Source of the DNA: Paragordius varius | Taxonomy: Eukaryota > Animalia > Nematomorpha | NCBI GenBank assembly: GCA_964247055.1 | Contig: OZ176051.1 | Span: 8,928,001 to 8,992,000, forward strand | DNA: 64,000 bases | Reading direction: 5' to 3' | Part shown: piece after piece, positions 5,531 through 62,900 of the stretch | How positions within the stretch are numbered: the stretch's first letter is position 1 | Layout: each line of letters starts with the position of its first letter | Notes under the pieces: generated by a model | Told to the model about the DNA's origin: nothing | What the model saw: only the letters and a program-made list of their open reading frames with translations | Databases searched by the model: none | Made by a program: the position numbers and the translations under genes

Positions 5531-6016
5531 CAGTGTAAATGGTATTAATAATAAATAGGTCTAAACTTTTTAGTAAGGAATGCTTAAATTTAGCTGACAT
5601 TTGATAAATTTATAGTAGAATTAGAATCAGCTGACGTTTTTTAACGATCATCTTATATTGAAAGTACGGACTTTTAGAATTAAAAAACCCAAGATTTCAT
5701 ACTATCAACAAATTCAGAGCGTAAATGTATTTTTTTGACAGTCAAAAACAGTCTTTGGTTGTAATTCCGATTTTTTATTCTGGGTTACCCCAACCTTTGT
5801 TAATATAAACTTCATCATTAGGCCCATGTTTTAATTTATTAAAATCTTTCACGTGTAATATAAACGATTCTTACTTCATTTGATATCTAGTTGTACAATT
5901 AGATCTTGATAATGGAGTAAAATATTTTAAGAAGCCTCCATAAAAAACGACACAATCATTCAAAAAAAATAATCTTAACTTTTAGCTTTTTTGTATTACG
6001 GAAAAAAATTTAATGC

Positions 6017-6057
<41 letters not shown>

Positions 6058-6059
<2 letters not shown>

Positions 6060-7500
6060 CCCATTTTCAAAAATAAAGGAGATATCCTAACCTGTTCCTC
6101 ATACAGGCCCTTAAAACTTCTTGAACATGGGTTAAAAAATTTTGAAATGTGCCTCAAAAATCGTATCGTCCAGCTCATATCAATTAATCCAATGCAATTC
6201 GCCTTTTCAGCGGGCAAAAGCACAATCGATCCAATTTTACTACTCAGACAATTACAAGATAAATACCGAGCAAAAGGTCGTAAACTATTCCACCTTTTTG
6301 TCGATTTAGAAAAGGCTTACGACTCAGTACCTAGAGCACTAATAATAGAATCACTGCGCTACAACAACGTAGATGAATATACCATTAAGTTAATTATGTT
6401 AATCTACACTAACTCAATCAGTTGTGTTCTTACTCCTGTTGGGAATTCAGAGTATTTTAGTATAAATACTGGGCTGCATCAGGGATCTGTCCTTAGCCCA
6501 CTTCTTTTTATAGCTATAATTGATTACATAACAAAAGATATGAGAGAAGGTCTGCCTTATGAATTTCTTTATGCAGACGACCTCATAATCACTGCAGAAG
6601 ATATTTCAATACTCGAAAATAAATATCTTATATGGTCAAAACAATTACATAAATACGGTCTTAAAATCAATACAAACAAAACTAAAATTCTAATCACAGG
6701 AGATGAACATAAAACTATAAAGTTCCCATGCCCAGTGTGCACCACTGAGTTAAAACTAAACTCACTTTGTTGTACAAAATGCAGAAATTGGGTCCATAAA
6801 AAATGTTCCAACATAAAAGGAAAGTTAATTAATAATAATAATTTCATCTGCACACCATGTGCTTCATCAATACCACTACCAATATCGAATCCACGTACTT
6901 TAAACTTTAATGGAGATAAACTAGAAGTTGTAATTTCCATATCTGGGCGATTATATAGCATCTGATGGTTCTTTGAGGGATGCCATTTCTCATAGAATCA
7001 GACAAGGATGGGCCAAATTCAATCAATTAAAATATATTTTAACTAATAAAAATATCAAATCGAATCACAAGATAAAGATTTACAAAATGGGAATAAGACC
7101 AGCTATGACATACGCTACAGAAACCTGGGCCCTTACAGCAACAAACCTAAATAGACTTACTAGAGCTGAAAATCACATGCTCAAAATCTGTAACAATAAT
7201 TTTGATAATATATAGAAGAAGATGAACCCATAGCTTTATTCATTCAGCGCAATCGATTGCGATATTACGGACATATTCAACGTATGAATTCCGATAACTG
7301 GGTCCAAAAAATACAACATTTAAATATACCCGGCCCAAACAGAAAAGGCCGCCCTAAGCTCACATGGTCCAAACAGCTGACCCAAGATCTATCACACTTC
7401 AATATTGAACGCGAACAAGTCTTTGATAGGACATTGTTCAGATGGTGCATGGAAACCCCAGATACCCTGGGACCTAAAATGAATGGATGGATGGATATAT
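6058..7500 (+). mobile_element. 5'-truncated RTE-like LINE: reverse transcriptase with a PHD-like zinc-finger insert; defective
   Basis: ORF 5991-6965 has RT motifs YRPLKLL, QFAF..GKST, FVDLEKAYDSVPR, GLHQGSVLSPLLF and YADD, followed by CPVC..CCTKCRNWVHKKCS..FICTPC. A frameshift near 6930 and a later stop are followed by IRPAMTYATETW and RYYGHIQRM. Ends in an (ATGG)n-like tail. Confidence 0.92.
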
Positions 7501-7918: not shown

Positions 7919-10900
7919 TTAATTTGGCGAATACCACGTTTGAACATTCCTTTTGTCAAATGATAAAATTTTATGGGGTAACATTAAACCATCATGTAAA
8001 GAATTCGTTTTCGCATCTTTTATAGCATCGGCTTCTTTATGATTGCAATTATTTTTTGTAGCTATTGGTATTAATTTTGTAGTTTCCAAATTAGAATCAA
8101 GAGTTTTCATAAAATTTTCAATCAAAAACCTAACACTGTCGGAGATGGGATAATCTTTGGCCTCTAACAAATCTTTGACCTGTTAAATAAAGCATAGAGA
8201 GTGTTAAATATTTAAAAAGCGGATTAATTTTATTTGTCTATGGTTAAGTTTTAACATATTTTATAAATAACGGTTAAATATGAATATTGAAATAAAAATA
8301 AATTTAGTTTTCAAAATTTTTAAAACCTTTTTAATCATGCTACCAAATAGTTGTTAATGTTCCCAAAAAATTCTGTTATGGCTTTGGTTTTTAGTGTAAC
8401 TAATACTATGCAAATACTAGTCAAAAATATAAGTAATTTATACAACCAAAATTTTATAGACGCTCTATATATCTGAAATATCAAAATATATTTCATTTTA
8501 AATAAAATGGGCATTAAATATGTTTTGAAATATTTAAAAAGAACTTTAATTTCAGCAACCGTTTGAAACCGCTGTTCCAGTTTAAATACAGTTTCAAAAA
8601 AGTTATCAATAGTATCACTTTAACATCCCTTTTTTCTAACGTATTCGAACAAACATGCGTGCCTCGAACTTCTAAACTGCACAATTTTTCAATCATCACT
8701 GTTAGCCCTGGGCAGGCGAGTGTTAAAGCCTTCACAAGTCCGGATACAATTTAGGTCCTTACTCTCAATAAAAAAGAAGAAAAGACACTCTAAACTGTAT
8801 ATTTATTTATTTTTAACAAAAAATGTCATAAAAATACTTTAATCCATTGAGCATCTTGGACTTCGCGAATATCTTTGACAATGTCACAATTTTGGGCACG
8901 AAGAATACAGACGAAATAAAGATCAGAACAGCCGAATAAATAGGTATGATTATGTCTAAAACTTAAAATCCCACCAAATTGTGTAGAGATTCCAGTTTCT
9001 TCCTTAACTTCACGGCAAGCTGTATCGCTTATTTCCTCACCTTTCAAAAAAACAAAACAACATAGAATATCATTGGTGTTTTGCATTTCAGTTTAAATAT
9101 TTTAAAAACACTCTTATAATTCACGAAGTTATCATTATTCAACAATTTTATTTTATTTTATTATTGAGTTTCATTTTATGCATCAAAATTAATCAAAACT
9201 CTAATATTGACCACCTTTTCTGATTCACGCTATCTTATACCCTTCAACATCTTAAATTTGGCCTTGAACATTTCCAACACCATTAAATACAAATAATGAT
9301 TTCAAATTTATCCTAAAAGCAATTCTAATTTTCTGTTAAGTTATCTACACAATAATTGAACCTCAAGTTTATACCTTTTAATTATCTCTTAAAACACAAA
9401 TAAACCCTAGGTTTAATTCTGTTGCAATGACTGATTCATTGTTTTTTATATAGTCAAAATGTTTTTATAGTTTTCAAATTTTCAAATTAAAATGAACAAT
9501 AAATATGCCAAAAAAACTAAAATTCAATTAAATTTCTAGCGTGATTTTAGCCAAAGAGACATAATGTTTAGGGTAAATGTAAATTTAGTGGTATATTAAA
9601 ATATGCACTAAACACAAATTTTAAATGATGCTTAAAAAGTGATATAATATACTTACCAGGCTCAGATAAACCACCAGGAAATTTCCAAAAATGGCCATTA
9701 CGTTTTTCTCGTATAACTAAAACCCGAGGATTAGCCAAAGAATGTAAAGTCATATCCTCAGGATGCATTACAATACCAGACACGCCAACTGTGGTAAAGG
9801 CATAGCTTGGTAAATTAACGTTTTGACGTTTTTCATTACCTTTATATATGTAAAATTAATGAATGTGTTTAAAATTGAATAAAATTATTAAATTTCTGAA
9901 TTATGAATTCGATTAAGTTGATTATATAAAACTTCAGATACTCAAAAAAAGTCAATACAATAAAATGCGCTTTAACATTAAATAGGTATTATTGGTTTGG
10001 CCCAGTTATTGGGATTCCATGGATTAATTTACGATATATGTCTCTATCATTTGTTGCGTTTCGAGGTATGTTCAGGAATTTAAAGTCTTGTTCTATGATT
10101 TGCCTTTAAGGTTGGGGGCAGAAATCTGTAAATCAAGAATTTCCTTTGCAGGTGAGTCTATACTGGATCTGTCTATGTGTCCAAAATACCGATCTCTATT
10201 TGTTCTGATAAAAGCTGTTATTGGTTCTAGTTCAATGGTAAGATTTATCATCATATATTTTAGCATTTTATCTTCCGTTCTTTTCCTCGATTCTAATGTT
10301 TTTGTGATTGTTCAGGTTTCGCTGGCGTAGGTAAGGGTAGGGCGGACACCCACTTTATACATTTTGATTTTATTTTTTACGGTTATGTCTTTATGTGTCA
10401 ATACATATTTGAGTTGATTAAATTTTGCCCAGCCGAGTTTGATACTATGTGATATGGTTGTTTGAGGGTCCCCATTATTATTACTGATATTACCTAAATA
10501 GGTAAAATCGTTGACGATTTCGAACCTACAATCTTCGATACTGAACTCCCTTGATTTAGGGATGTTTGGTTTCCCAGATATACAGCTTTGGCATTTAAAA
10601 TTTTTATTGTCAACTAATTTTCCTTTCAAGTTAGAGCATTTTTTATGGACCCACATTTAACACGATGTACATAGAATGGAATTTGTTTTTACCTCGTTGT
10701 AACAAATGGAGCAAGAATATTTTATGGTTCTTTTTTCATCTCCTGTGATCATTACCTTCGTCTTTTCTATGTTTATTTTTAGCCCATGTTTTTAAAAACA
10801 GTTATGCCATTTAAGGTATGAACTTTTCAGTTCATGGGCTGTTTTTGCTGTTATAACCGCAATATCATTTTCAATTAATTATTCGTTCATCTTTCGTTTA

Positions 10901-12012
10901 AAGAATACTTCAAGAATTTAACATTTTTATAGATTTGGTAATAAGATATTTAAAATTAATTACTTATGTCAACATGTCCATTGCTTGTATCATTTGTTTT
11001 TTCACTTCCATTTGACAAATTGGTGGTTAAATTACTGGCAGAAACATTGTTTTCGACTGTGTCGTGATTGTCATCTGTCGTCCCATTTAAAATTTTGGTT
11101 AACATAACATATTCTTCGTCTGCAACAGGGTGAGTCGATTTATTTTGGCTACGTTTTCCTGTAAAATAATATATAAATGAAAATAACTTTGATGCTTTTT
11201 TAAAGACTTATATAAAATTAACCTAAAAATGGTATTTCTAGAATATGGTTATTCATTATGAATTTTTAACACAGAATAAAAATTTAAAATGTGCGTCCTT
11301 TAATCCAAAAAATTAAAATATGAAAGAAAAAAAAAGCTAAACATTACTTATAATTTTCAAGGAGTGGAAATAATAATCTATTTTATAGACACAAAATTTT
11401 TTGAAAAATATAAAAGTATAACTCAATATCACCTTATAACAATAGTTAAAATAACCTAAAAATTTATTATAATTTATTTAAATATTATCATTTATGTCCC
11501 TATACATGTTAAATGTAATGATAATTTTACGTAGATTAATCCTTAAAGTTTCCATAAATCAATTAGAAACTATAAGACTTATATTAACACCTATCATAAC
11601 TGGGGAATTGATTATATTATATTTAGGCAAAATGTACTGGAAGTAAACGGATATTCATTAAATAATTATGTTTAATGGTGTAATATAAATGCCAAAAATA
11701 ATAAAATTTTAACCTACCTATAGCATGATGGAAAGTGAAACCTTTTTGAATCAAAATTGGGATCCATTTAGTGTCACGTATCCCGACTTTGAACCAAACA
11801 GCTTTAGCCTTTTTACCTCCAGATAATCGGTTACTTTGCCAATCGTCAATACATCGATCAAGCAATTTACTAATATCATCGGGAGACATACATGGAAACG
11901 AAAATCGGCGAGTATCAAGTGTTATACAGTCATACGGATCCAAGAAATATTTAATTGATGGCATATCAGATTCTGAATTTTGTGAGGACGCTGATGATGA
12001 AGAAAGCAACAT
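7919..12012 (-). CDS. NUDT6: Nudix hydrolase 6-like, ~378 aa. Exons 12012-11718, 11158-10964, 9839-9657, 9040-8838, 8179-7919. Start codon uncertain (12012 or 11964)
   Basis: Spliced frame contains AVWFKV..LIQKGFTFHHA, LPSYAFTTVGVSG, VLVIREK..WKFPGGLSEPG|EEISDTACREVKEETGI (Nudix box) and FGCSDLYFVC..EVQDAQWI, matching NUDT6/plant NUDT2-type architecture. All junction phases are consistent. Confidence 0.9.
8560..8760 (+). repeat. Dispersed repeat in NUDT6 intron 4; related copy at ~30370-30620
   Basis: CCTGGGCAGGCGAGTGTTAAAGCCTTCACAAGTC (~8707) resembles CCTGGGAAAGCGACTATTAAAGCTTTCACAAGTC (~30432). Confidence 0.5.
10030..10900 (-). mobile_element. RTE-like LINE 3' fragment with PHD-like insert, in NUDT6 intron 2
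   Basis: Minus-strand coding: LKINIEKTKVMI, MWVHKKCSNLKGKLVDNKNFKCQSC, FTYLGNI, GWAKFNQLKYVLT, VRPTLTYASET. Same family as the copy at 6058. Confidence 0.88.
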
Positions 12013-12097
12013 ACGGTTTTTACAAAGATATTTTTTATTGTTCGTACATAACAACCGAATATTGTTGGCTGCTAAATTTTTTGTTAGACGTTGCAAG

Positions 12098-12525
12098 TTA
12101 TACAGATTCTGGCGTTTTGATAGCTGTTTTAAAAGCTTCTAGCCTTTCTCTACGTTTAGAGCTTCTATTCGCAGACTTTATAAATTTGGAGTAGCTTTCT
12201 TTCTCCTTTTGCAATTTTATACTATTTTCGCCATTTAAAAATATATCAAGTTTTTCCTGTAAGAGATATTTTGCAAATTTACGGTTTTCACAAAGGGATC
12301 GATCTAATTGACACTATTTATTAAAAAACAAAAAACCTTTATCGAAACACCAGAAGGAATATGTGTGAGTGAGACACAATTTCGAGATTTATTAATTTTT
12401 TGACCACCCGGCCCTGTTCCTTTGATAAATTGTTCTTCAACGTCGGATTGCTTTAATGGTGGGTAAATATTACGGATCGTAGGGCGACTAGAAAATTTTT
12501 TAAAACAGTTAAAACACACATTCAT
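12098..12525 (-). CDS. MTRFR: Mitochondrial translation release factor in rescue (C12orf65), 134 aa. Exons 12525-12337 and 12313-12098
   Basis: Reads [40 protein letters not shown]|[31 protein letters not shown] followed by a basic tail. Contains the GGQ motif and the C12orf65-type C-terminus; one 23-nt GT-AG intron (12314-12336). Confidence 0.92.
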
Positions 12526-14189: not shown

Positions 14190-15660
14190 GATTTAAATTG
14201 GGGTATCCGAATACCCCAGACTAAATTTAAGTTAGGATTTTTAAAAAACTACTGAAGGAAAAGGTCCCATTTAAGTTTATGCTTCTAATTTAATAAAAAT
14301 TATATAAACATGTCAAAATATCCAAAAAAATTGTGTTTTGAAAAAAAAGTTCCATGTCAAACTACTTCGATGCCATTTTTATTTTACCAAATTTTTGCAA
14401 ATATCGTTTTAATTTAATTTTAAGGGTTATTTTATTATTACATCTAAAAATGATACAAATAGGAAAACCGGTTTATTTTGTATTATTTCTAATTTTACCA
14501 TTGCACACATGTCACGTTGACTAAATATATACCTTTCGGTTTTAGTTTAAAAAAAATAATATCAAGTATTTTTGAATAATTTTTTCATTTTGGTTTGTTG
14601 ATGTTATATAAGTGCAAAATTTTGCCAAAGTTTCGACTCCTTCTATACTTTTAAAATAATATTGTAAACAGGCCTGGGGTATTTACCTACCCCAATTTGA
14701 TTCGAAGGACTAAAATGAATGTGTTGTATCCAAGTAAAAAGTGTTATTGGAATTGCGAGATAATAATTTTGATATGCCAAAATATACCAGCAACAAAATT
14801 TAAGATATATGCTTTGTTAAAATTTTCAATGTTTAGAAATACTTTGAATTTATGGTATCTAAATACATAATGAAAAACACTAAGATATTATTAAAACACC
14901 CTTGATGATACATGTCCATCGTACAATTTAATTAAAATAATTTTTTCCCAAAATATTTTAATCTCCTTAGGAGATATAGCGTTCCTGAATCATAAATCAA
15001 ATTAAGGCAACAGATCCCAATAATAATAAGAAAAAAAATTGCTGTCAAAATATGATTTAATGCATTTAATAAAACTTAACACTTGGATACAACACATTAA
15101 TATTAGTCCTTCGATTCAAATTGGGGTAGTTAAATACCCCAGGCCTTTTAAAATTAAATTCTTCAAAAAATATGGAAGGAATCGAAATTATGGCAAAATC
15201 ATGCACTTATATAACATTAATAAACCGAAATATATAAAAAAAAAATTCAAAAATATTTGATATTACATAAGCTAAAACCGAAAGGAAAAAATTTAGTCAA
15301 CCTGACATGCGTGAAATGGTAAAATTAAAAAATAATACAAAGTAAACAGCTTTTTCTATTTCTATCAATATTAGATGTAATTTAAATAAAAAATTAGCTT
15401 TGATTTTACCCTTAAAATTAAATGAACACGATATTTTGCAAAAAATTTGAATAAAAATGGCGTCGAAGTAGATTGACATCTAACTTTTTTTTTAAACAAA
15501 ATTTTATTTAAATATTTTGGCATATTTATATAATTTTTATTAGGATAGAAGCATAAATATAAATTGGGGCCGTTTCCTTCAGTAGTTTTTTGAAAATCCT
15601 AACTCAATTAGTCTGGGGTATTTAGGTACCCCAATTTGAATCGATATGTTAACCATAATA
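14190..15660. mobile_element. Foldback-like non-autonomous element with ~600-bp inverted arms
   Basis: 14190-14790 is the diverged reverse complement of 15060-15660, e.g. AACTACTGAAGGAAA/TTTCCTTCAGTAGTT and CTACTTCGATGCC/GGCGTCGAAGTAG. Boundaries are approximate. Confidence 0.8.
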
Positions 15661-16171
15661 TTTTTTTACAGTAAAGCGGCAAAAATTTGAGATGTTTTTT
15701 TGGTCTTAAGAAACATATTCTTTACATACTTCTTGACATTACACCTAAGTTATTTATAGTGAAAGCGCAGAAAAATTCAAAAGGTTGTGATTTTTAAAAT
15801 TATATTTTTTTATTAAATTTTTTATTGTTTATAGTTATGTATCTTTAGAGTTTTAAATATTAACTGAGTGTTTATTTTAAATTCAGAATATCTATACCAC
15901 TGTCTAGAATTCTATGTTAATTAATATTTTATTAAATCAAAACATATTCGTGGTGAAGTATGTAACAAGACTTTCCAAATTACATTTTTAAAAAATATTG
16001 CAATGAGTTTGAAAATGACAGAAAACATATAAATTTGATTATCGCTCTGAAGTCAAACACCTCTAATAGTGTATAGATTTTAATTAAATGTGAGCACAAT
16101 AATGACATAATTCATTTTATTCTTCCAACAAACTAAACCCATATTATAAAATCAATCAAAACTTGTATATA

Positions 16172-19110
16172 TAAGGTGACCAGATTTTTTGAAGGAAAAA
16201 GCGGGACAAATCTGAGAAAGGGGAGGGGGTTATGAGGTGGGGTGTACAACCAAAAATTTTTATACAAAAAATAATTTATTGTAGTATTTATTTATTTTTG
16301 ACACAAATACATTATAAATATAAAAAAATATTTAATTCCTTGGTATATTTTTTATTTGGGTGAATGCGTTTTAGCACATTGTCATCATTTTATAAAATGT
16401 TGTAGAAGTCTTCACAAGAATTTGTCGAATTATATTTCACAGATAAAATGGTAAAGTTTCAACATTTAAATTTGATTTTCCCGATGTCCACATCTGATTA
16501 ATTGTGGAAAAAACGCGCTCAGTAGCAGCGTTGGTACCACGTAAAGATAATGCAAATTCTACAATTTTTAAAATATTGTATGGAACATAGTTTGTTTCAA
16601 AATGATGAAATATTTCTAACCATTTCTTTTCTACTGTTTTCTGTTGTCCATAATTTAAGTTTTTCTATTAATATATTTTATAACTAATGATATTTTAGAA
16701 GATATTTTCTTAAAGGTTACTTTTTGGGAATTTTTGGGAGATGCAGAAATGATTTTTGAACATCGCACCAATTATATTCTGGTTATAATGTTATCCAATG
16801 AAAATGATCAATTTCATTAAATTGCACTGTCCAGTCTTCCAATAATCTTTACAGTTTGTATAAAACATTTTTAATGTTACAGGATATCTAGGCGATTTAT
16901 TAAGCCTTGTTTTTCTAAATATTTATAATATTGCGGATGGTTACTGGTATAAAATTATTTTATAACCTTTCTTGACATTGGAATTTTAGGTTACTAACTT
17001 CATTGACTACTTCGATTGCCGAAGTTTTGTCACTTTCTATCAATTTAATAACATTTTGAAAGAGAGAAGCTTGATTATGTAGGAACTCTAACCATATTGA
17101 AGAATCACTTTCAAAAAACTTCTCCAAAGTTGTAGGACATTTGTCCTGTGATAAAAAAATAGGATTTTATAGTATCATTTTTTAAAATTCCTTCGATAGC
17201 TTGCAGAAGAGCAAACCAACGAGTTTTACAATATCCAAACTTTTTTTAATATTGAACTTCTGCATTTGCACAGAATTTCTTAAGCGTTTCAACGCGTACC
17301 GTGTATATAAAAATAGGAATATACCTTAACAATTACATTTTCCACATCTAGGGGTAACAAATCAGCAGCTGTTTGAATAGCGTTGTGTGTTTTATGCGCT
17401 ACACACCCAACGTCAATAAATGGATTAAGATTATCTGCTAATTACTGAAAATTATTTTTTGTTCCCTCCTTGCTTTTCCACTGAAGTTCGTATTGGTGTT
17501 GTCACCGCAATATGCGATGATTTTGTCTTTTAAATTATTTTTTCCTAGAATATTCATTATTGAAGTAAAATTATGTCGGAATTCGCACCGGGTAGAGAAA
17601 TAAAATTTAAAATTTTAATTTTACTCCGGTTTCTGGACCAAAATATTTTAACGTGGGAAATATTTTTGTTTCCTGATTTGATACATCAGAGTATGGCGAT
17701 ATGAAATTAATTTTTAGCAAATCTTTTTGTATTCAGAAAATGCATGTGGCGTAAGGACAATGCATACAATGGCTTCAGCCTTTGTACGGGCACGAATAAT
17801 ATGTGAGGTACAATCCATAGATCTAAAGGATGATTGTGATAAACGCGTGAAAAGATAAAACGCCTTGGGCTAGTGCCAAATCTCCAAAAGCGGTTTTACG
17901 ATAAAAATCGCTCATGTAAGATGATGCCACCATATCTAAACATTTTTTATGTTTCTGTGTTTCCATATGCTTTGTAATATCATGCTTATCGCTATGTGGT
18001 AGGGTGAACCCCTAACATAAAGCATTTAACAAATGATTCATTCTTCGTTTTTTTGATAAAAGGAAATTCTTTCATTAAATCATCGTTGAATTTACAATCT
18101 CTTTTTGTACTCATATTTTAAACTAATCTATATATTTATAAAAATGGAAAATGCTGGCTTTGTGATCTGGTACCGGAAAACCGGCAGACTCATTCAAATC
18201 GAAACTTCAAAAAAATATAATCATTAATGAATGCCCCAACAATAGCTTCGCCCTTTTTTTGAAATAGGCCCCCAGTTCGGGCCCACCCCGTGTGAAAAAC
18301 GGTATTTTTTGAAAACAGAAGTCCACAAAAATCGTGTCTTTGAGACAATTTTCTGGAAAACGTGTTGGACCATTCAATTTCAAATATGATTTTTGTTTAC
18401 TTATTTTCGATTGCGCCGAACATAGTCGTCTCGCTTTGAATTTAGGTCCTCTTTTTACCCGCTCCCTCCGTAAAATGCCATTTTTTTCAAAAAACAAAGT
18501 CCACAAAAATATTTTTTAAATCTATTTTTCGCCCTATTAAACAATATATTAATATGAATGCTCCGTTTTATAAATCCTATAAAATCATATCTATTAAATA
18601 ATGTTTCGAAATAATCCACATATGTGGATCATTTTATTGTCCCTTATTTCAAATAGCCCTCCACCCCCCCCCCCCCCCCCCCCCCCCCCCAGAAGTTTGA
18701 AGGACTTCCTCGGGATGCGCAGCAGCACGAGATTTACGCTAGTATTAATATATAAAAATATTATATTACCTTAATTTTCTGGAGTAAACGTATAAGCTAC
18801 CGATTTATGATATTAATTTGTCTTTTTGATAATGTTGGCAGTAGGATTAGGAAGCAAAGTGTATATTCATATGATATAAATTTGAAAAAAAATAAATATT
18901 TTTAATTTAAAAATAAAAAACTTTAATTTAAAATTGATACAGTTTGAAAAGATAACTAATGATAAAAAATTTAAACGGATAAAAAAAAAATTTTTATACA
19001 AAATTCTAATGTATTTAAAATTTTTTTTTTATAATCCTTAAAAAACGGGACTCAAAAACGCAGCGGGACGCGGGACAAAGTGTGAAAAAGCGGGACGTCT
19101 GGTCACCTTG
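16172..19110 (-). mobile_element. hAT DNA transposon (Blackjack-like) with decayed transposase
   Basis: TIRs TAAGGTGACCAGA / TCTGGTCACCTTG and a perfect 8-bp TSD TGTATATA (16164-16171, 19111-19118). Disrupted transposase runs from ATG 18114 (MSTKRDCKFNDDLMKEFPFIKK..DITKHMETQKHK..RTKAEAIV..) to ~16330. Confidence 0.9.
18127..18742 (+). mobile_element. Non-autonomous Helitron-like element (short form), nested in the Blackjack hAT 12 nt upstream of its transposase ATG
   Basis: Starts A|TCTATATA and ends ..GCAGCACGAGATTTACGCTAG|T. AT target, no TSD. Long poly-C tract before the 3' end. Confidence 0.85.
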
Positions 19111-59919: not shown

Positions 59920-62900
59920 CAGTGGTACTCAAACCGCGGCCCTAAGAGTGCTTTAAAATTGCCCTATGACCATATTGATACTTAAATTATCTTTTTACTG
60001 ATGAATTTTTAAAATACACATAAACAAATTTTCGCTTATAATATTAATTTATTTTCTTTAGATTTTTTGATAATTTTTCTTTTTTACCCAATTTGAAATG
60101 TAGAAAAATTTCCCTACATAAGGATTTCAATATTTTGGCACACGTTGTTTTTGTTTCTGTTTTATTTTGATATTTTTATTGCATTCCTTTTTGTAGCAAG
60201 CCTTTCACCCAAACTCGCACATACATATTCTTTTCATTGCTATCCTGCATCATTTTTTATAATTCATTCCCATATATTTTTGAAATCAACATCCTTAAAT
60301 TTCAACCTGTTTTTTTATAGCATAATTAAAATTATATTCCTAATTTTTTAAAAAATTTACATAATATTTATACATAAATTCAAAGGATGACATCAAATGC
60401 TAAAACGTAAATTATACGATGAAAATCGCTTCTCAAAAAAAGTGGGAATTCTTTGTCGTTTTAAATAAAAATGTTGCTACCTGCGTCATATGTAAGGACA
60501 ACATAATTATAAAAAATACAATATTGAAAGATATTCAATTCATCATTTTATAAATTACCAGAAAATCATGAGGAAAGAAACGAAATATAAAAAACTAGCG
60601 TAAATCTCGTGCTGCTACGCAGCCCTAGGAAGTCCTTCGGACTTCTGGGGGGGAGGGGGGGCTCTTTTGATTTTATAAGCAATTTCGTTATGCGGAACGA
60701 AGTTTTAAAATGATTCACATAGTCTCATAAGTTTTCTGAAATTTGGCTCCAAAGGTATGCTGTATCGATATGATGGCGCAGTTGTAGGCGATAGCCCCCA
60801 ACCCATAGGCCAATATAAAAATGTAGTTAGATAAAAGTTTTTGCCTTTATACCTGAAATCATCGTTCATTCCTAATAGTTTATGGAAGAATGGCTTCAAA
60901 ACTAAATAATAGTTCAATGATAGCGCATTTTTTAGGGAGTAAAGGGCTTATTTAACGGCTAATTCACGCTCGACTAAAATTTTTGACTTTTTACGAATAC
61001 TTTGAGCAGCTATTGAACTCAAATGGCTTAATAGGTTTTCTGAAATTTAGCCCCAAAAGCACGCTATTTTAATATGACGGGTCAGTTTTTCGCGAGTAGC
61101 TCCTTACTCAGCAGCTATCATCAAAGAAACGCTTGACTAAAATTTTTCCCTTTCAACAGGGAATACGTGGAATCCTTATTGAATTTTTACGGTCTCATAC
61201 CCTGGGCGAAAAATAGATTTAAAAAATCATTTAAGTGGACTTTGTTTTTGTGAAAAAAGTGGCATTTTACGGGGAGAGCGGGTAAAAAGAGGGCCTAAAT
61301 TAAAAAAGCGAGACGACTATGTTTGGCGCAATCGAAAATAAGTAAACAAAAATTATATTTGAAATTGAATGGTCCAACACGTTCTCCGGAAAATTGTCTC
61401 AAAGACACGATTTTTGTGGACTTATGTTTTCAAAAAAACCCGTTTTTCACACGGGGTGGGCCCGAACTGGGGGCCTATTTCAAAAAAAGGGCGAAACTAA
61501 TGTCGGGGCATCTATTAATGAATATATTTTTTCGATATTATTTGAATGGGTCTACCGGTTTTCCGGAAACAGATCACAAAGCCAGCATTTTCCATTTTTA
61601 TAAATATATAGATTAAGAAATTTTACCAGAGAGAAAAATCTATTATGTCCATTGCTTTCTCCCAGGAAAAAGCTGTAACATTAGCTTCGTATGAAATTTG
61701 CTACATTTTGGGAAAAATATATGAAACCGTTTACTGATTCCCAACTAATAAAAGAATGTCGAAATGGTTGCACTTTTTTATTTGATAAATTCCATAATAA
61801 AAAACATATCATGAAGCAAATTAAAAAGCTTTAAATTTCTGATTCAACATGTGCTCGACGCATTGAAGATATGTCTAAATATATTTTTAAAATACATTAT
61901 TGGCTCTGAAAAACTGCAAATATTTTAGTATTGCTATTGATTCTAGCACTGATATTAGTTGAGATTAACGACAACATAATCAACGAGGAATATTTATAAT
62001 TTTTGCCAATGAATAATACCACGAAAGTAAGTGATTTTCTCGAAATAATTAGCACTTTTTTCGATAATAATGGTATATCTATGAAAAAATTGGTTTCAAT
62101 CTGCACAGATGGCTGTCCCTCTATGACTGAAATAAACAAGGGATTTATTCCTCTTTTAAAAAAAATATAATTTGCAAAATATTTTCTTTCACTGCTTTAT
62201 TCATCAAACTTGGTTTCGCGTGTAAAGGATAAATCACTCAATTCAGTAATTAAAACGGTTGTGGATATAGTTAACCACATCCGTGGCAGAGAATTTAACC
62301 GCCGTAAATTCAAAAACCTTCTGAAAGATATCCACAGTCAGTTTGATGATATTCTTTAGTACAACTCTCTGAGATGGCTAAGCTAAAGCAAAGTATTAAA
62401 TAGATTTTTTGTTTTAAGATATGATCTATTATTTATAAATCACAGAATGTTTGACGAGGAAATTAATAGTGATGAATGGTGTGTTTCATTAGCCTACTGA
62501 CAGTACTTATAAACTTAGGATTTACAAGTCTTCAAGAGATCAAAATAATAACCCAATTGGCTAATCAAATATTTGCTTTTGAAGAATAAATAATATATAA
62601 GATTTTATAAATTAAAAACTCCTATTTTTCCAACAATTAAAACAATTTATGAAGAAAATATGGAATACCGCGGAGATTAAAATAATGATAGATAATCATT
62701 AACCTTTTTATCTAATGAGATGAAATTCATCAAGAATTAATATTAAAAATTACTTAACTCGTTGAAAATCCATGGCATATGGATATATCCAATATTAATC
62801 AACTTGAGCATTTCGGTTTTGACCAGGCTCATTGAAGAATTCGTAGATTTCAAAAATGATTTCAATTTGTAGGTTATATTCAAAAATCGTAGAGAAAAAA

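What the first reader, a model, noticed from the sequence alone, without database searches (positions are those of the whole stretch)
11964..12525. Operon-like MTRFR-NUDT6 junction: poly(A) signal, acceptor and open overlapping frame within ~130 nt
Seen in sequence (minus strand): MTRFR stops at 12098. An AATAAA follows at 12039-12034. The first NUDT6 ATG is at 12012, only 85 nt after the stop and about where MTRFR cleavage would be expected. An ATTCAG acceptor (AG at 11974-11973) lies 8 nt before a second ATG (11964, MPSIKY), which is where Nudix-family similarity appears to begin. The NUDT6 frame is also open back into the last MTRFR codons in the +1 frame ([31 protein letters not shown].., basic and lacking acidic residues), with in-frame TAG/CAG acceptors that are phase-compatible with MTRFR exon 1. 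Established: nematode and tunicate operons use this poly(A)-then-trans-splice-acceptor layout. Inference: there is little room for an independent promoter. Options are (a) a polycistronic pre-mRNA resolved by spliced-leader trans-splicing, (b) an MTRFR-exon1/NUDT6 splice fusion, (c) a +1 shift at GTA-TAA-C, or (d) a NUDT6 promoter inside MTRFR.
Basis: partly seen in the sequence, partly recalled or inferred. Interest (0 to 1): 0.75.

Follow-up and report, generated by a model that had tools for sequence, protein, structure and literature searches.

The report
Tightly linked MTRFR-NUDT6 gene pair
In a horsehair-worm-type genome a small mitochondrial ribosome-rescue gene (MTRFR) ends 85 bases before a Nudix hydrolase gene (NUDT6); a distant horsehair worm keeps the same head-to-tail pair, so the two probably share a transcript, but no RNA data could be reached to show how.

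Summary
The contig is not human. It is a 29% GC animal genome whose closest relative in the databases is the horsehair worm Gordionus.

- Gordionus keeps MTRFR directly upstream of NUDT6 on the same strand, with a 295-nt gap. A nematode and a wasp do not.
- In both worms the NUDT6 frame stays open and free of Asp/Glu upstream of its first ATG, for 42 and 77 codons (shuffle P about 0.002 each). Six control starts (MTRFR, RPL35A, HSC70, PFDN1, TRIP13) give 1-17 codons.
- ATG triplets are scarce from the MTRFR start to the NUDT6 start in both worms. Much of that comes from a Met-free protein.
- A stop/start-overlapping gene pair elsewhere in this genome was verified, so very tight pairs do occur here.

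- Three stop codons in Gordionus argue against the +1 frameshift.
- No nematode-type spliced-leader gene was found, so trans-splicing is neither supported nor excluded.
- The exon-1 fusion is not excluded.

My best reading, at about 0.4, is a shared bicistronic-type transcript read by scanning ribosomes. A separate promoter inside the MTRFR 3' end is nearly as likely.

The scan has already flagged many similar tight pairs on other DNA of this genome.

The parts
12337..12525 (-). MTRFR-like exon 1 (63 codons, ATG 12525-12523, GGQ motif, ends in phase 0)
   Evidence: Translation. Pfam RF-1 E 4e-10. Best PDB matches are C12orf65/MTRFR, residues 55-94 of 7a5h_C. 61% identical to Gordionus exon 1.
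12314..12336 (-). 23-nt GT..AG intron of MTRFR
   Evidence: Read. The flanking exons abut at residues 94 and 95 of human MTRFR. Gordionus has a roughly 5.7-kb intron at the same position.
12098..12313 (-). MTRFR-like exon 2 with stop TAA at 12100-12098
   Evidence: Translation. PDB 7a5h_C residues 95-153, E 3e-7. tblastn match to the Gordionus model.
12013..12097 (-). 85-nt spacer between the MTRFR stop and the first NUDT6 ATG. It holds one ATG, which opens a 4-codon mini-ORF.
   Evidence: The fold is not unusual.
12034..12039 (-). AATAAA, the candidate MTRFR poly(A) signal (frequency is at chance level)
12013..12138 (-). 42-codon stretch in the NUDT6 frame upstream of the first ATG. It is open, has no Asp or Glu and has 11 Lys/Arg. 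It overlaps the last 13 MTRFR codons in the +1 frame.
   Evidence: Shuffle P 0.0018. Control genes show 1-17 open codons.
11718..12012 (-). NUDT6-like exon 1 (ATG at 12012, second ATG at 11964, donor GT at 11717-11716)
   Evidence: Pfam Nudix_hydro E 7e-14. 68% identical to Gordionus P0001 over residues 22-99. BLASTP E 1e-32.
11973..11978 (-). ATTCAG acceptor-like site 8 nt before the second ATG, preceded by a pyrimidine-rich tract at 12010-11981
   Evidence: Read. No RNA evidence is available.
10964..11158 (-). NUDT6-like exon 2 (low-complexity linker)
   Evidence: Read. It keeps the frame in the 5-exon model.
9657..9839 (-). NUDT6-like exon 3 (start of the Nudix fold, ends in GGLSEPG)
   Evidence: tblastn 52% to P0015.
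8838..9040 (-). NUDT6-like exon 4 (Nudix box)
   Evidence: Pfam NUDIX E 3e-5. tblastn 66% to P0015.
7919..8179 (-). NUDT6-like exon 5 with stop TAA at 7921-7919
   Evidence: tblastn 35% to P0015. The five exons total 1137 nt with a single terminal stop.

Best explanation
MTRFR and NUDT6 form a conserved head-to-tail cassette in horsehair worms. The NUDT6-coding RNA includes the MTRFR 3' end and most likely the whole MTRFR cistron.

Proposed mechanism, all inferred rather than shown:
- One transcript starts at the MTRFR promoter.
- Ribosomes that start at the MTRFR AUG make the small ribosome-rescue factor. That AUG has a pyrimidine at -3 and A at +4 in both species.
- Ribosomes that skip it scan through an AUG-poor MTRFR cistron and spacer and start at NUDT6.
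- The leader is open and acid-free in the NUDT6 frame. Occasional near-cognate starts there would add a basic, mitochondrial-presequence-like N-terminus to a share of NUDT6.

Shown here: the gene models, the spacing, the conservation of the pair, the open acid-free frame in two species and the scarcity of ATG.
For: - Same order and strand in Gordionus, with a 295-nt gap and the MTRFR intron at the same position. The proteins are only about 45% identical between the two worms. MTRFR and NUDT6 are the only conserved elements shared by the two loci.
- The pair is not adjacent in Pristionchus or Ceratosolen.
- The NUDT6 frame upstream of the first ATG is open and free of Asp/Glu for 42 codons in the window and 77 in Gordionus. 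P is 0.0018 and 0.0014. Six control starts give 1-17 codons.
- ATG triplets from the MTRFR start to the NUDT6 start number 4 in 490 nt in the window (expected 7.4) and 3 in 730 nt in Gordionus (expected 9.1, P 0.001). For the CDS alone, Fisher P is 0.0015.
- Fifteen control coding stretches show 205 ATGs observed against 202 expected.
- Very tight pairs exist in this genome. I verified a Prefoldin_2 ORF whose stop overlaps the ATG of a Vma12 ORF as TAATG.
- Scarce AUGs in the upstream ORF, together with a Kozak-like region that departs from the consensus, are the described signature of leaky-scanning bicistrons in fly stoned/Snapin and green algae (PMC11291117).
Against: - No RNA of any nematomorph could be reached, so co-transcription is unproven.
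- Under a null that keeps the protein and its codons, ATG scarcity is weak (P about 0.1 in each species). The absence of in-frame Met in MTRFR may simply be a trait of the protein family.
- Three AUGs still lie between the MTRFR start and NUDT6 in the window.
- An AATAAA sits in the spacer.
- The 295-nt Gordionus gap is richer in G+C than that genome and could hold a promoter.
- RPL35A and HSC70 also have a pyrimidine at -3, so a weak MTRFR start context cannot be claimed.
- The two upstream extensions share no detectable sequence similarity.
Confidence: 0.4

Rival explanations
1. Two separate mRNAs. NUDT6 has its own compact promoter inside the last MTRFR exon or the spacer. The pair stays together only because the promoter overlaps the upstream gene. 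A near-cognate upstream start could still produce the extension.
For: - 85 nt in the window, and especially 295 nt of relatively G+C-rich spacer in Gordionus, could hold a core promoter.
- AATAAA lies after the MTRFR stop in both species.
- TATA-like words occur at 12101-12097 and 12040-12027.
- ASNS, a long ATG-rich gene, ends 59 nt before TRIP13 in this genome. Tight spacing therefore also occurs where leaky scanning cannot work.
- Scan notes report many head-to-head pairs with start codons about 24 nt apart (s1-277305, unchecked). That would imply very compact promoters.
Against: - It does not explain the ATG scarcity inside MTRFR exon 1, which lies about 6 kb upstream in Gordionus.
- The flanks of the pair are kilobases of transposon-rich DNA, so the tightness is not general genome compaction.
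Confidence: 0.35
2. A true operon. A polycistronic pre-mRNA is cut at the MTRFR poly(A) site, and NUDT6 receives a spliced leader at the AG at 11973 or at an upstream in-frame AG. A leader that ends in AUG could even supply the missing start codon.
For: - The layout is stop, AATAAA, pyrimidine tract, then CAG/TTCAG 8 nt before an ATG.
- ASNS-TRIP13 has the same kind of layout.
- Scan notes list many 0-18 nt same-strand pairs and very close divergent starts in this genome (unchecked).
- Nematoda, commonly regarded as the sister phylum (my own knowledge, not checked here), resolve operons this way (PMC7668243).
Against: - No hit to Rfam SL1 or SL2 in the genome.
- The SL1 22-mer matches only transposon ends.
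- 5S genes are dispersed and carry no linked small RNA gene.
- The library holds no report of spliced leaders in Nematomorpha.
- The distance from the expected cleavage site to the acceptor is about 40-50 nt, shorter than the nematode median of about 124-129 nt.
- Trans-splicing at 11973 would discard the conserved open leader.
- ATG scarcity in the upstream gene is not expected in an operon.
Confidence: 0.1
3. Exon sharing. MTRFR exon 1 (phase 0 donor at 12337/12336) is alternatively spliced to an in-frame acceptor (before 12138, 12123 or 12108). That gives NUDT6 its AUG and an N-terminal extension. A variant has an unseen upstream exon, with MTRFR nested in NUDT6 intron 1.
For: - An ORF open far upstream of the first ATG with no in-frame ATG, in two species, is what an internal coding exon looks like.
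- The phases fit in the window.
- The TTTTAAAACAG before 12123 resembles the real acceptors of this gene.
- Gordionus has one in-frame AAG|GTT, and AAG acceptors are used in this gene.
Against: - The fusion would carry half an RF-1 domain, including the GGQ loop.
- Gordionus offers only a single weak in-frame acceptor.
- There is no RNA evidence.
Confidence: 0.08
4. Programmed +1 frameshift at GTA-TAA-C joins MTRFR to NUDT6.
For: The +1 frame is open across the MTRFR stop in the window.
Against: In Gordionus the same relative frame holds three stops between the genes. No known shift-stimulating structure is present.
Confidence: 0.01

Closest known systems
Leaky-scanning bicistronic mRNAs (Drosophila stoned and Snapin loci; green-alga bicistrons, PMC11291117)
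   Same: A small upstream ORF, a short spacer, few AUGs before the second start, and a pair that is conserved between species.
   Different: One mature mRNA has not been shown here. Three AUGs remain upstream of NUDT6 in the window. The ATG scarcity is only marginal once the protein sequence is held fixed.
Nematode SL2-type operons (C. elegans, Trichinella; PMC7668243)
   Same: Same-strand genes, a poly(A) signal followed by an acceptor-like AG just before the downstream start, and a related phylum.
   Different: No SL RNA gene was found. The spacing is shorter than the nematode median. No U-rich element was tested.
Dual targeting by upstream non-AUG or alternative starts (examples of alternative starts in PMC11291117; human NUDT6 long isoform with a presequence, from my own knowledge)
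   Same: A basic, acid-free extension in frame upstream of the main AUG.
   Different: No start codon has been identified, and the two worms' extensions share no sequence similarity.
Other tight pairs in this same genome (Prefoldin-1/TMEM199 TAATG overlap, verified here; scan notes on COX17-DPH3, PTRHD1-TMX2 and others)
   Same: A small, often mitochondrial, upstream gene directly ahead of a larger gene. The scan notes report several of these pairs as also kept in Gordionus; I did not check that.
   Different: Those spacers are 0-18 nt. This one is 85 nt and contains an AATAAA.

Membership tests
MTRFR / C12orf65 (GGQ-domain mitoribosome rescue factor) | RF-1/GGQ domain with a GGQ motif, and closest to C12orf65 rather than to class-I release factors | tested here: met
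   Pfam RF-1. GGQ is in exon 1. The best PDB hits are 2rsm and 7a5h_C, both C12orf65.
NUDT6-type Nudix hydrolase | N-terminal Nudix_hydro domain (PF18290) followed by a Nudix box | tested here: met
   PF18290 E 7e-14 and PF00293 E 3e-5. Homologues are named NUDT6 or nudix hydrolase 8.
SL-resolved operon | Spliced-leader RNA genes present in the genome | tested here: inconclusive
   Nematode-type SL1/SL2 models and the SL1 22-mer found nothing real. A novel leader could not be searched for.
SL-resolved operon | Downstream mRNA carries a non-genomic leader joined at an AG | not testable with these tools
   No nematomorph transcripts could be reached.
SL-resolved operon | Same-strand genes with a short spacer that holds a poly(A) signal and an acceptor | tested here: met
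   Each element on its own occurs at chance frequency.
Leaky-scanning bicistronic mRNA | Both ORFs on one mature mRNA | not testable with these tools
   No RNA data.
Leaky-scanning bicistronic mRNA | Upstream ORF and spacer depleted of AUG in all frames | tested here: inconclusive
   Dinucleotide shuffles give P 0.03 (window) and 0.003-0.005 (Gordionus). Synonymous-codon shuffles give about 0.1 each. Controls are not depleted.
Leaky-scanning bicistronic mRNA | Weak start context at ORF 1 | tested here: inconclusive
   T or C at -3 and A at +4 in both species. RPL35A and HSC70 also have a pyrimidine at -3.
Programmed +1 frameshift fusion | Shifted frame open between the two ORFs in relatives | tested here: not met
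   Three stops in Gordionus.

The most novel reading that the evidence does not exclude
Horsehair worms process polycistronic pre-mRNAs with a so far undescribed spliced leader, possibly one that donates the AUG. That would explain the ATG-less open leader of NUDT6, the acceptor-like sites before start codons and the many tight pairs in this genome. It would also move operons and trans-splicing back to the common ancestor of nematodes and nematomorphs.
Probability: 0.1. Interest if true: 0.85.

Novelty: new member of a known kind. Interest (0 to 1): 0.45.

Why it matters
If the pair is read from one RNA, it is one more case of two-gene messages in an animal phylum where none has been described in the papers I could search. 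Here the upstream gene is a mitochondrial ribosome-rescue factor, and the downstream enzyme seems to carry a hidden presequence. Together with the other tight pairs in this genome, it gives a concrete locus at which existing Gordionus RNA-seq could settle how nematomorphs express tightly packed genes: by bicistronic translation, by internal promoters or by trans-splicing. The last of these bears on the origin of nematode operons.

Tried and rejected
RNA evidence:
- Searches with NUDT6 exon 1, Gordionus NUDT6 and an intron-less small heat-shock gene of this genome returned no nematomorph transcripts.

Spliced-leader genes:
- Rfam SL1 and SL2 gave no hit on the whole genome.
The best two are the ends of a foldback transposon.
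- The flanks of 5S genes hold no shared small RNA gene.
- I tried to derive an snRNA promoter word from U2 and U5 genes to scan for unknown Sm-class genes. Only a TATA-like box near -30 is shared, so I dropped this route.

Other checks:
- Rfam on the window gave nothing.
- The bacterial promoter/terminator scan was uninformative.
- The two upstream extensions score below the shuffle mean for protein similarity.
- HSP70, RPS3A and RPL35A could not serve as transcript probes. No exon covers enough of the protein for the length window of the search tool.

How the searches were run: all database searches were exon by exon, by reference. Joined models were used only inside scripts, to check frame and length, to compute identity and to count and shuffle ATG triplets.

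Full report
**What the window is**

The window is 29% G+C. It has spliceosomal introns and retrotransposon debris. It is not human.

The genome piece set has 110.6 Mb in 44 contigs, and the window is C2:8,928,001-8,992,000.

NUDT6 exon 1 finds one close relative among 1.84 billion representatives. That is a 371-aa protein of Gordionus sp. m RMFG-2023 (Nematomorpha), 68% identical over residues 22-99. Across the whole proteins the two species are only about 45% identical, so they are distant relatives.

The scan's notes also call this a horsehair-worm-type genome.

MTRFR, on the minus strand:
- ATG at 12525; exon 1 runs to 12337.
- A 23-nt GT..AG intron.
- Exon 2 runs to the TAA at 12100-12098.
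- Exon 1 matches Pfam RF-1.
- The two exons match human C12orf65/MTRFR best in the PDB and abut at residues 94 and 95, so the tiny intron is real.
- Gordionus has an intron of about 5.7 kb at the same position.

The junction:
- AATAAA at 12039-12034.
- First NUDT6 ATG at 12012, 85 nt after the stop.
- ATTCAG with its AG at 11974-11973.
- Second ATG at 11964.
- The open +1 frame reaches back to 12138.

All of these are as described.

NUDT6 is a five-exon gene: 12012-11718, 11158-10964, 9839-9657, 9040-8838 and 8179-7919. Together they make 1137 nt with one terminal stop. It has a Nudix_hydro domain and a Nudix box.

Taken singly, the junction signals are at chance level. AATAAA occurs 359 times in the window. 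The spacer has no unusual fold.

**Comparative evidence**

- In Gordionus a 144-aa RF-1 gene lies directly upstream of NUDT6 on the same strand. The distance from stop to ATG is 295 nt.
- tblastx shows that these two genes are the only conserved elements shared by the 22-kb Gordionus locus and the 64-kb window.
- The NUDT6 homologues of Pristionchus and of a fig wasp have other neighbours.
- The pair is therefore old within horsehair worms but not general.

**Two features that exceed chance in both species**

First, the NUDT6 frame upstream of its first ATG.
- It is open for 42 codons in the window and 77 in Gordionus.
- It contains no Asp or Glu but many Lys and Arg.
- Dinucleotide shuffles give P 0.0018 and 0.0014 for open and acid-free together.
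- Six control starts have only 1-17 open codons upstream.
- Neither stretch has an in-frame ATG.
- The two stretches share no detectable similarity. That fits a fast-evolving presequence, but it also means there is no direct proof of translation.

Second, ATG triplets in any frame are scarce from the MTRFR start to the NUDT6 start.
- Window: 4 in 490 nt, expected 7.4.
- Gordionus: 3 in 730 nt, expected 9.1, P 0.001.
- Fifteen control coding stretches match expectation, 205 against 202.
- Caveat: when the protein and its codons are held fixed, P is only about 0.1 in each species. MTRFR has no internal Met, and that may be a family trait.

**Context in the same genome**

- I verified one of the scan's earlier leads. 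A 101-aa Prefoldin_2 ORF ends in TAA sharing its last A with the ATG of a 182-aa Vma12 ORF. Pairs with no room for a promoter therefore exist here.
- ASNS ends 59 nt before TRIP13, with AATAAATAAATAA in between. ASNS is ATG-rich, so tight spacing is not always tied to leaky scanning.
- The scan's notes list many more 0-18 nt pairs. They also list two further cases in which the downstream frame runs back into the upstream gene. I did not check those.

**Reading**

- The +1 frameshift is contradicted by three stops in Gordionus.
- Trans-splicing has no positive support. No paper in the library links nematomorphs and spliced leaders. Only nematode-type leaders could be tested.
- The open, ATG-less leader argues that the NUDT6 message begins inside or upstream of the MTRFR 3' end.
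- With the ATG scarcity and the known fly and alga precedent, a shared transcript read by scanning ribosomes is my first choice, at about 0.4.
- A promoter inside MTRFR, with or without a near-cognate upstream start, is close behind at about 0.35.
- An exon-1 or unseen-exon splice fusion stays possible, at about 0.08.

**Limits**

- No transcript of any nematomorph could be reached.
- Searches were made exon by exon, by reference.
- The scan had already found the same kind of tight pair on other DNA of this genome.

Noticed in passing
L002:3676-3684: Gordionus MTRFR reads GPGGS where the window and human proteins have GGQ. The catalytic glutamine is replaced, which suggests either a hydrolysis-dead rescue factor or a sequence error.
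   Followed up: partly
window 12314-12336; L024:1477-1499, 1654-1679, 1820-1844: Ultra-short introns. MTRFR has one of 23 nt, and RPL35A has three of about 23, 26 and 25 nt. The NUDT6 introns next door are 0.5-1.1 kb and hold transposon remains.
   Followed up: partly
window 14200-15700; L005:1500-1545; L007:1500-1545: A foldback/MITE-like transposon family whose terminal GGGGTA..TACCCC hairpin and following bases match the nematode SL1 22-mer at 19-20 of 22 positions. It mimics an SL hit but has no donor or Sm site.
   Followed up: yes
L020:757-1607 (G000:C2:11874256-11875106): A Prefoldin_2 ORF (101 aa) and a Vma12/TMEM199 ORF (182 aa) overlap as TAATG. Both are intron-less.
   Followed up: yes
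L019:1189-1253 (G000:C2, about 3906590-3906650): ASNS stop, then AATAAATAAATAA about 20 nt later, then an ATG 59 nt after the stop that the scan's note takes as the TRIP13 start. I did not check TRIP13. The layout matches the finding, but the upstream gene is long and ATG-rich.
   Followed up: partly
window 10000-10800 and 5991-6965: Non-LTR reverse-transcriptase remains with a C-terminal PHD-like zinc finger. One lies inside NUDT6 intron 2 on the sense strand.
   Followed up: no
G000 C3, C4, C5, C6, C8: 5S rRNA genes are dispersed in both orientations rather than in one tandem array. There is a small cluster at C4:291-315 kb.
   Followed up: partly
G000:C3:257000-528000: Dozens of full and decayed U2 snRNA copies cluster in about 270 kb of contig C3.
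   Followed up: no
window 18207-18506 (-) and 61323-61616 (+): Two copies of a repeat with a similar open frame of about 97-99 aa. It is unclassified.
   Followed up: no
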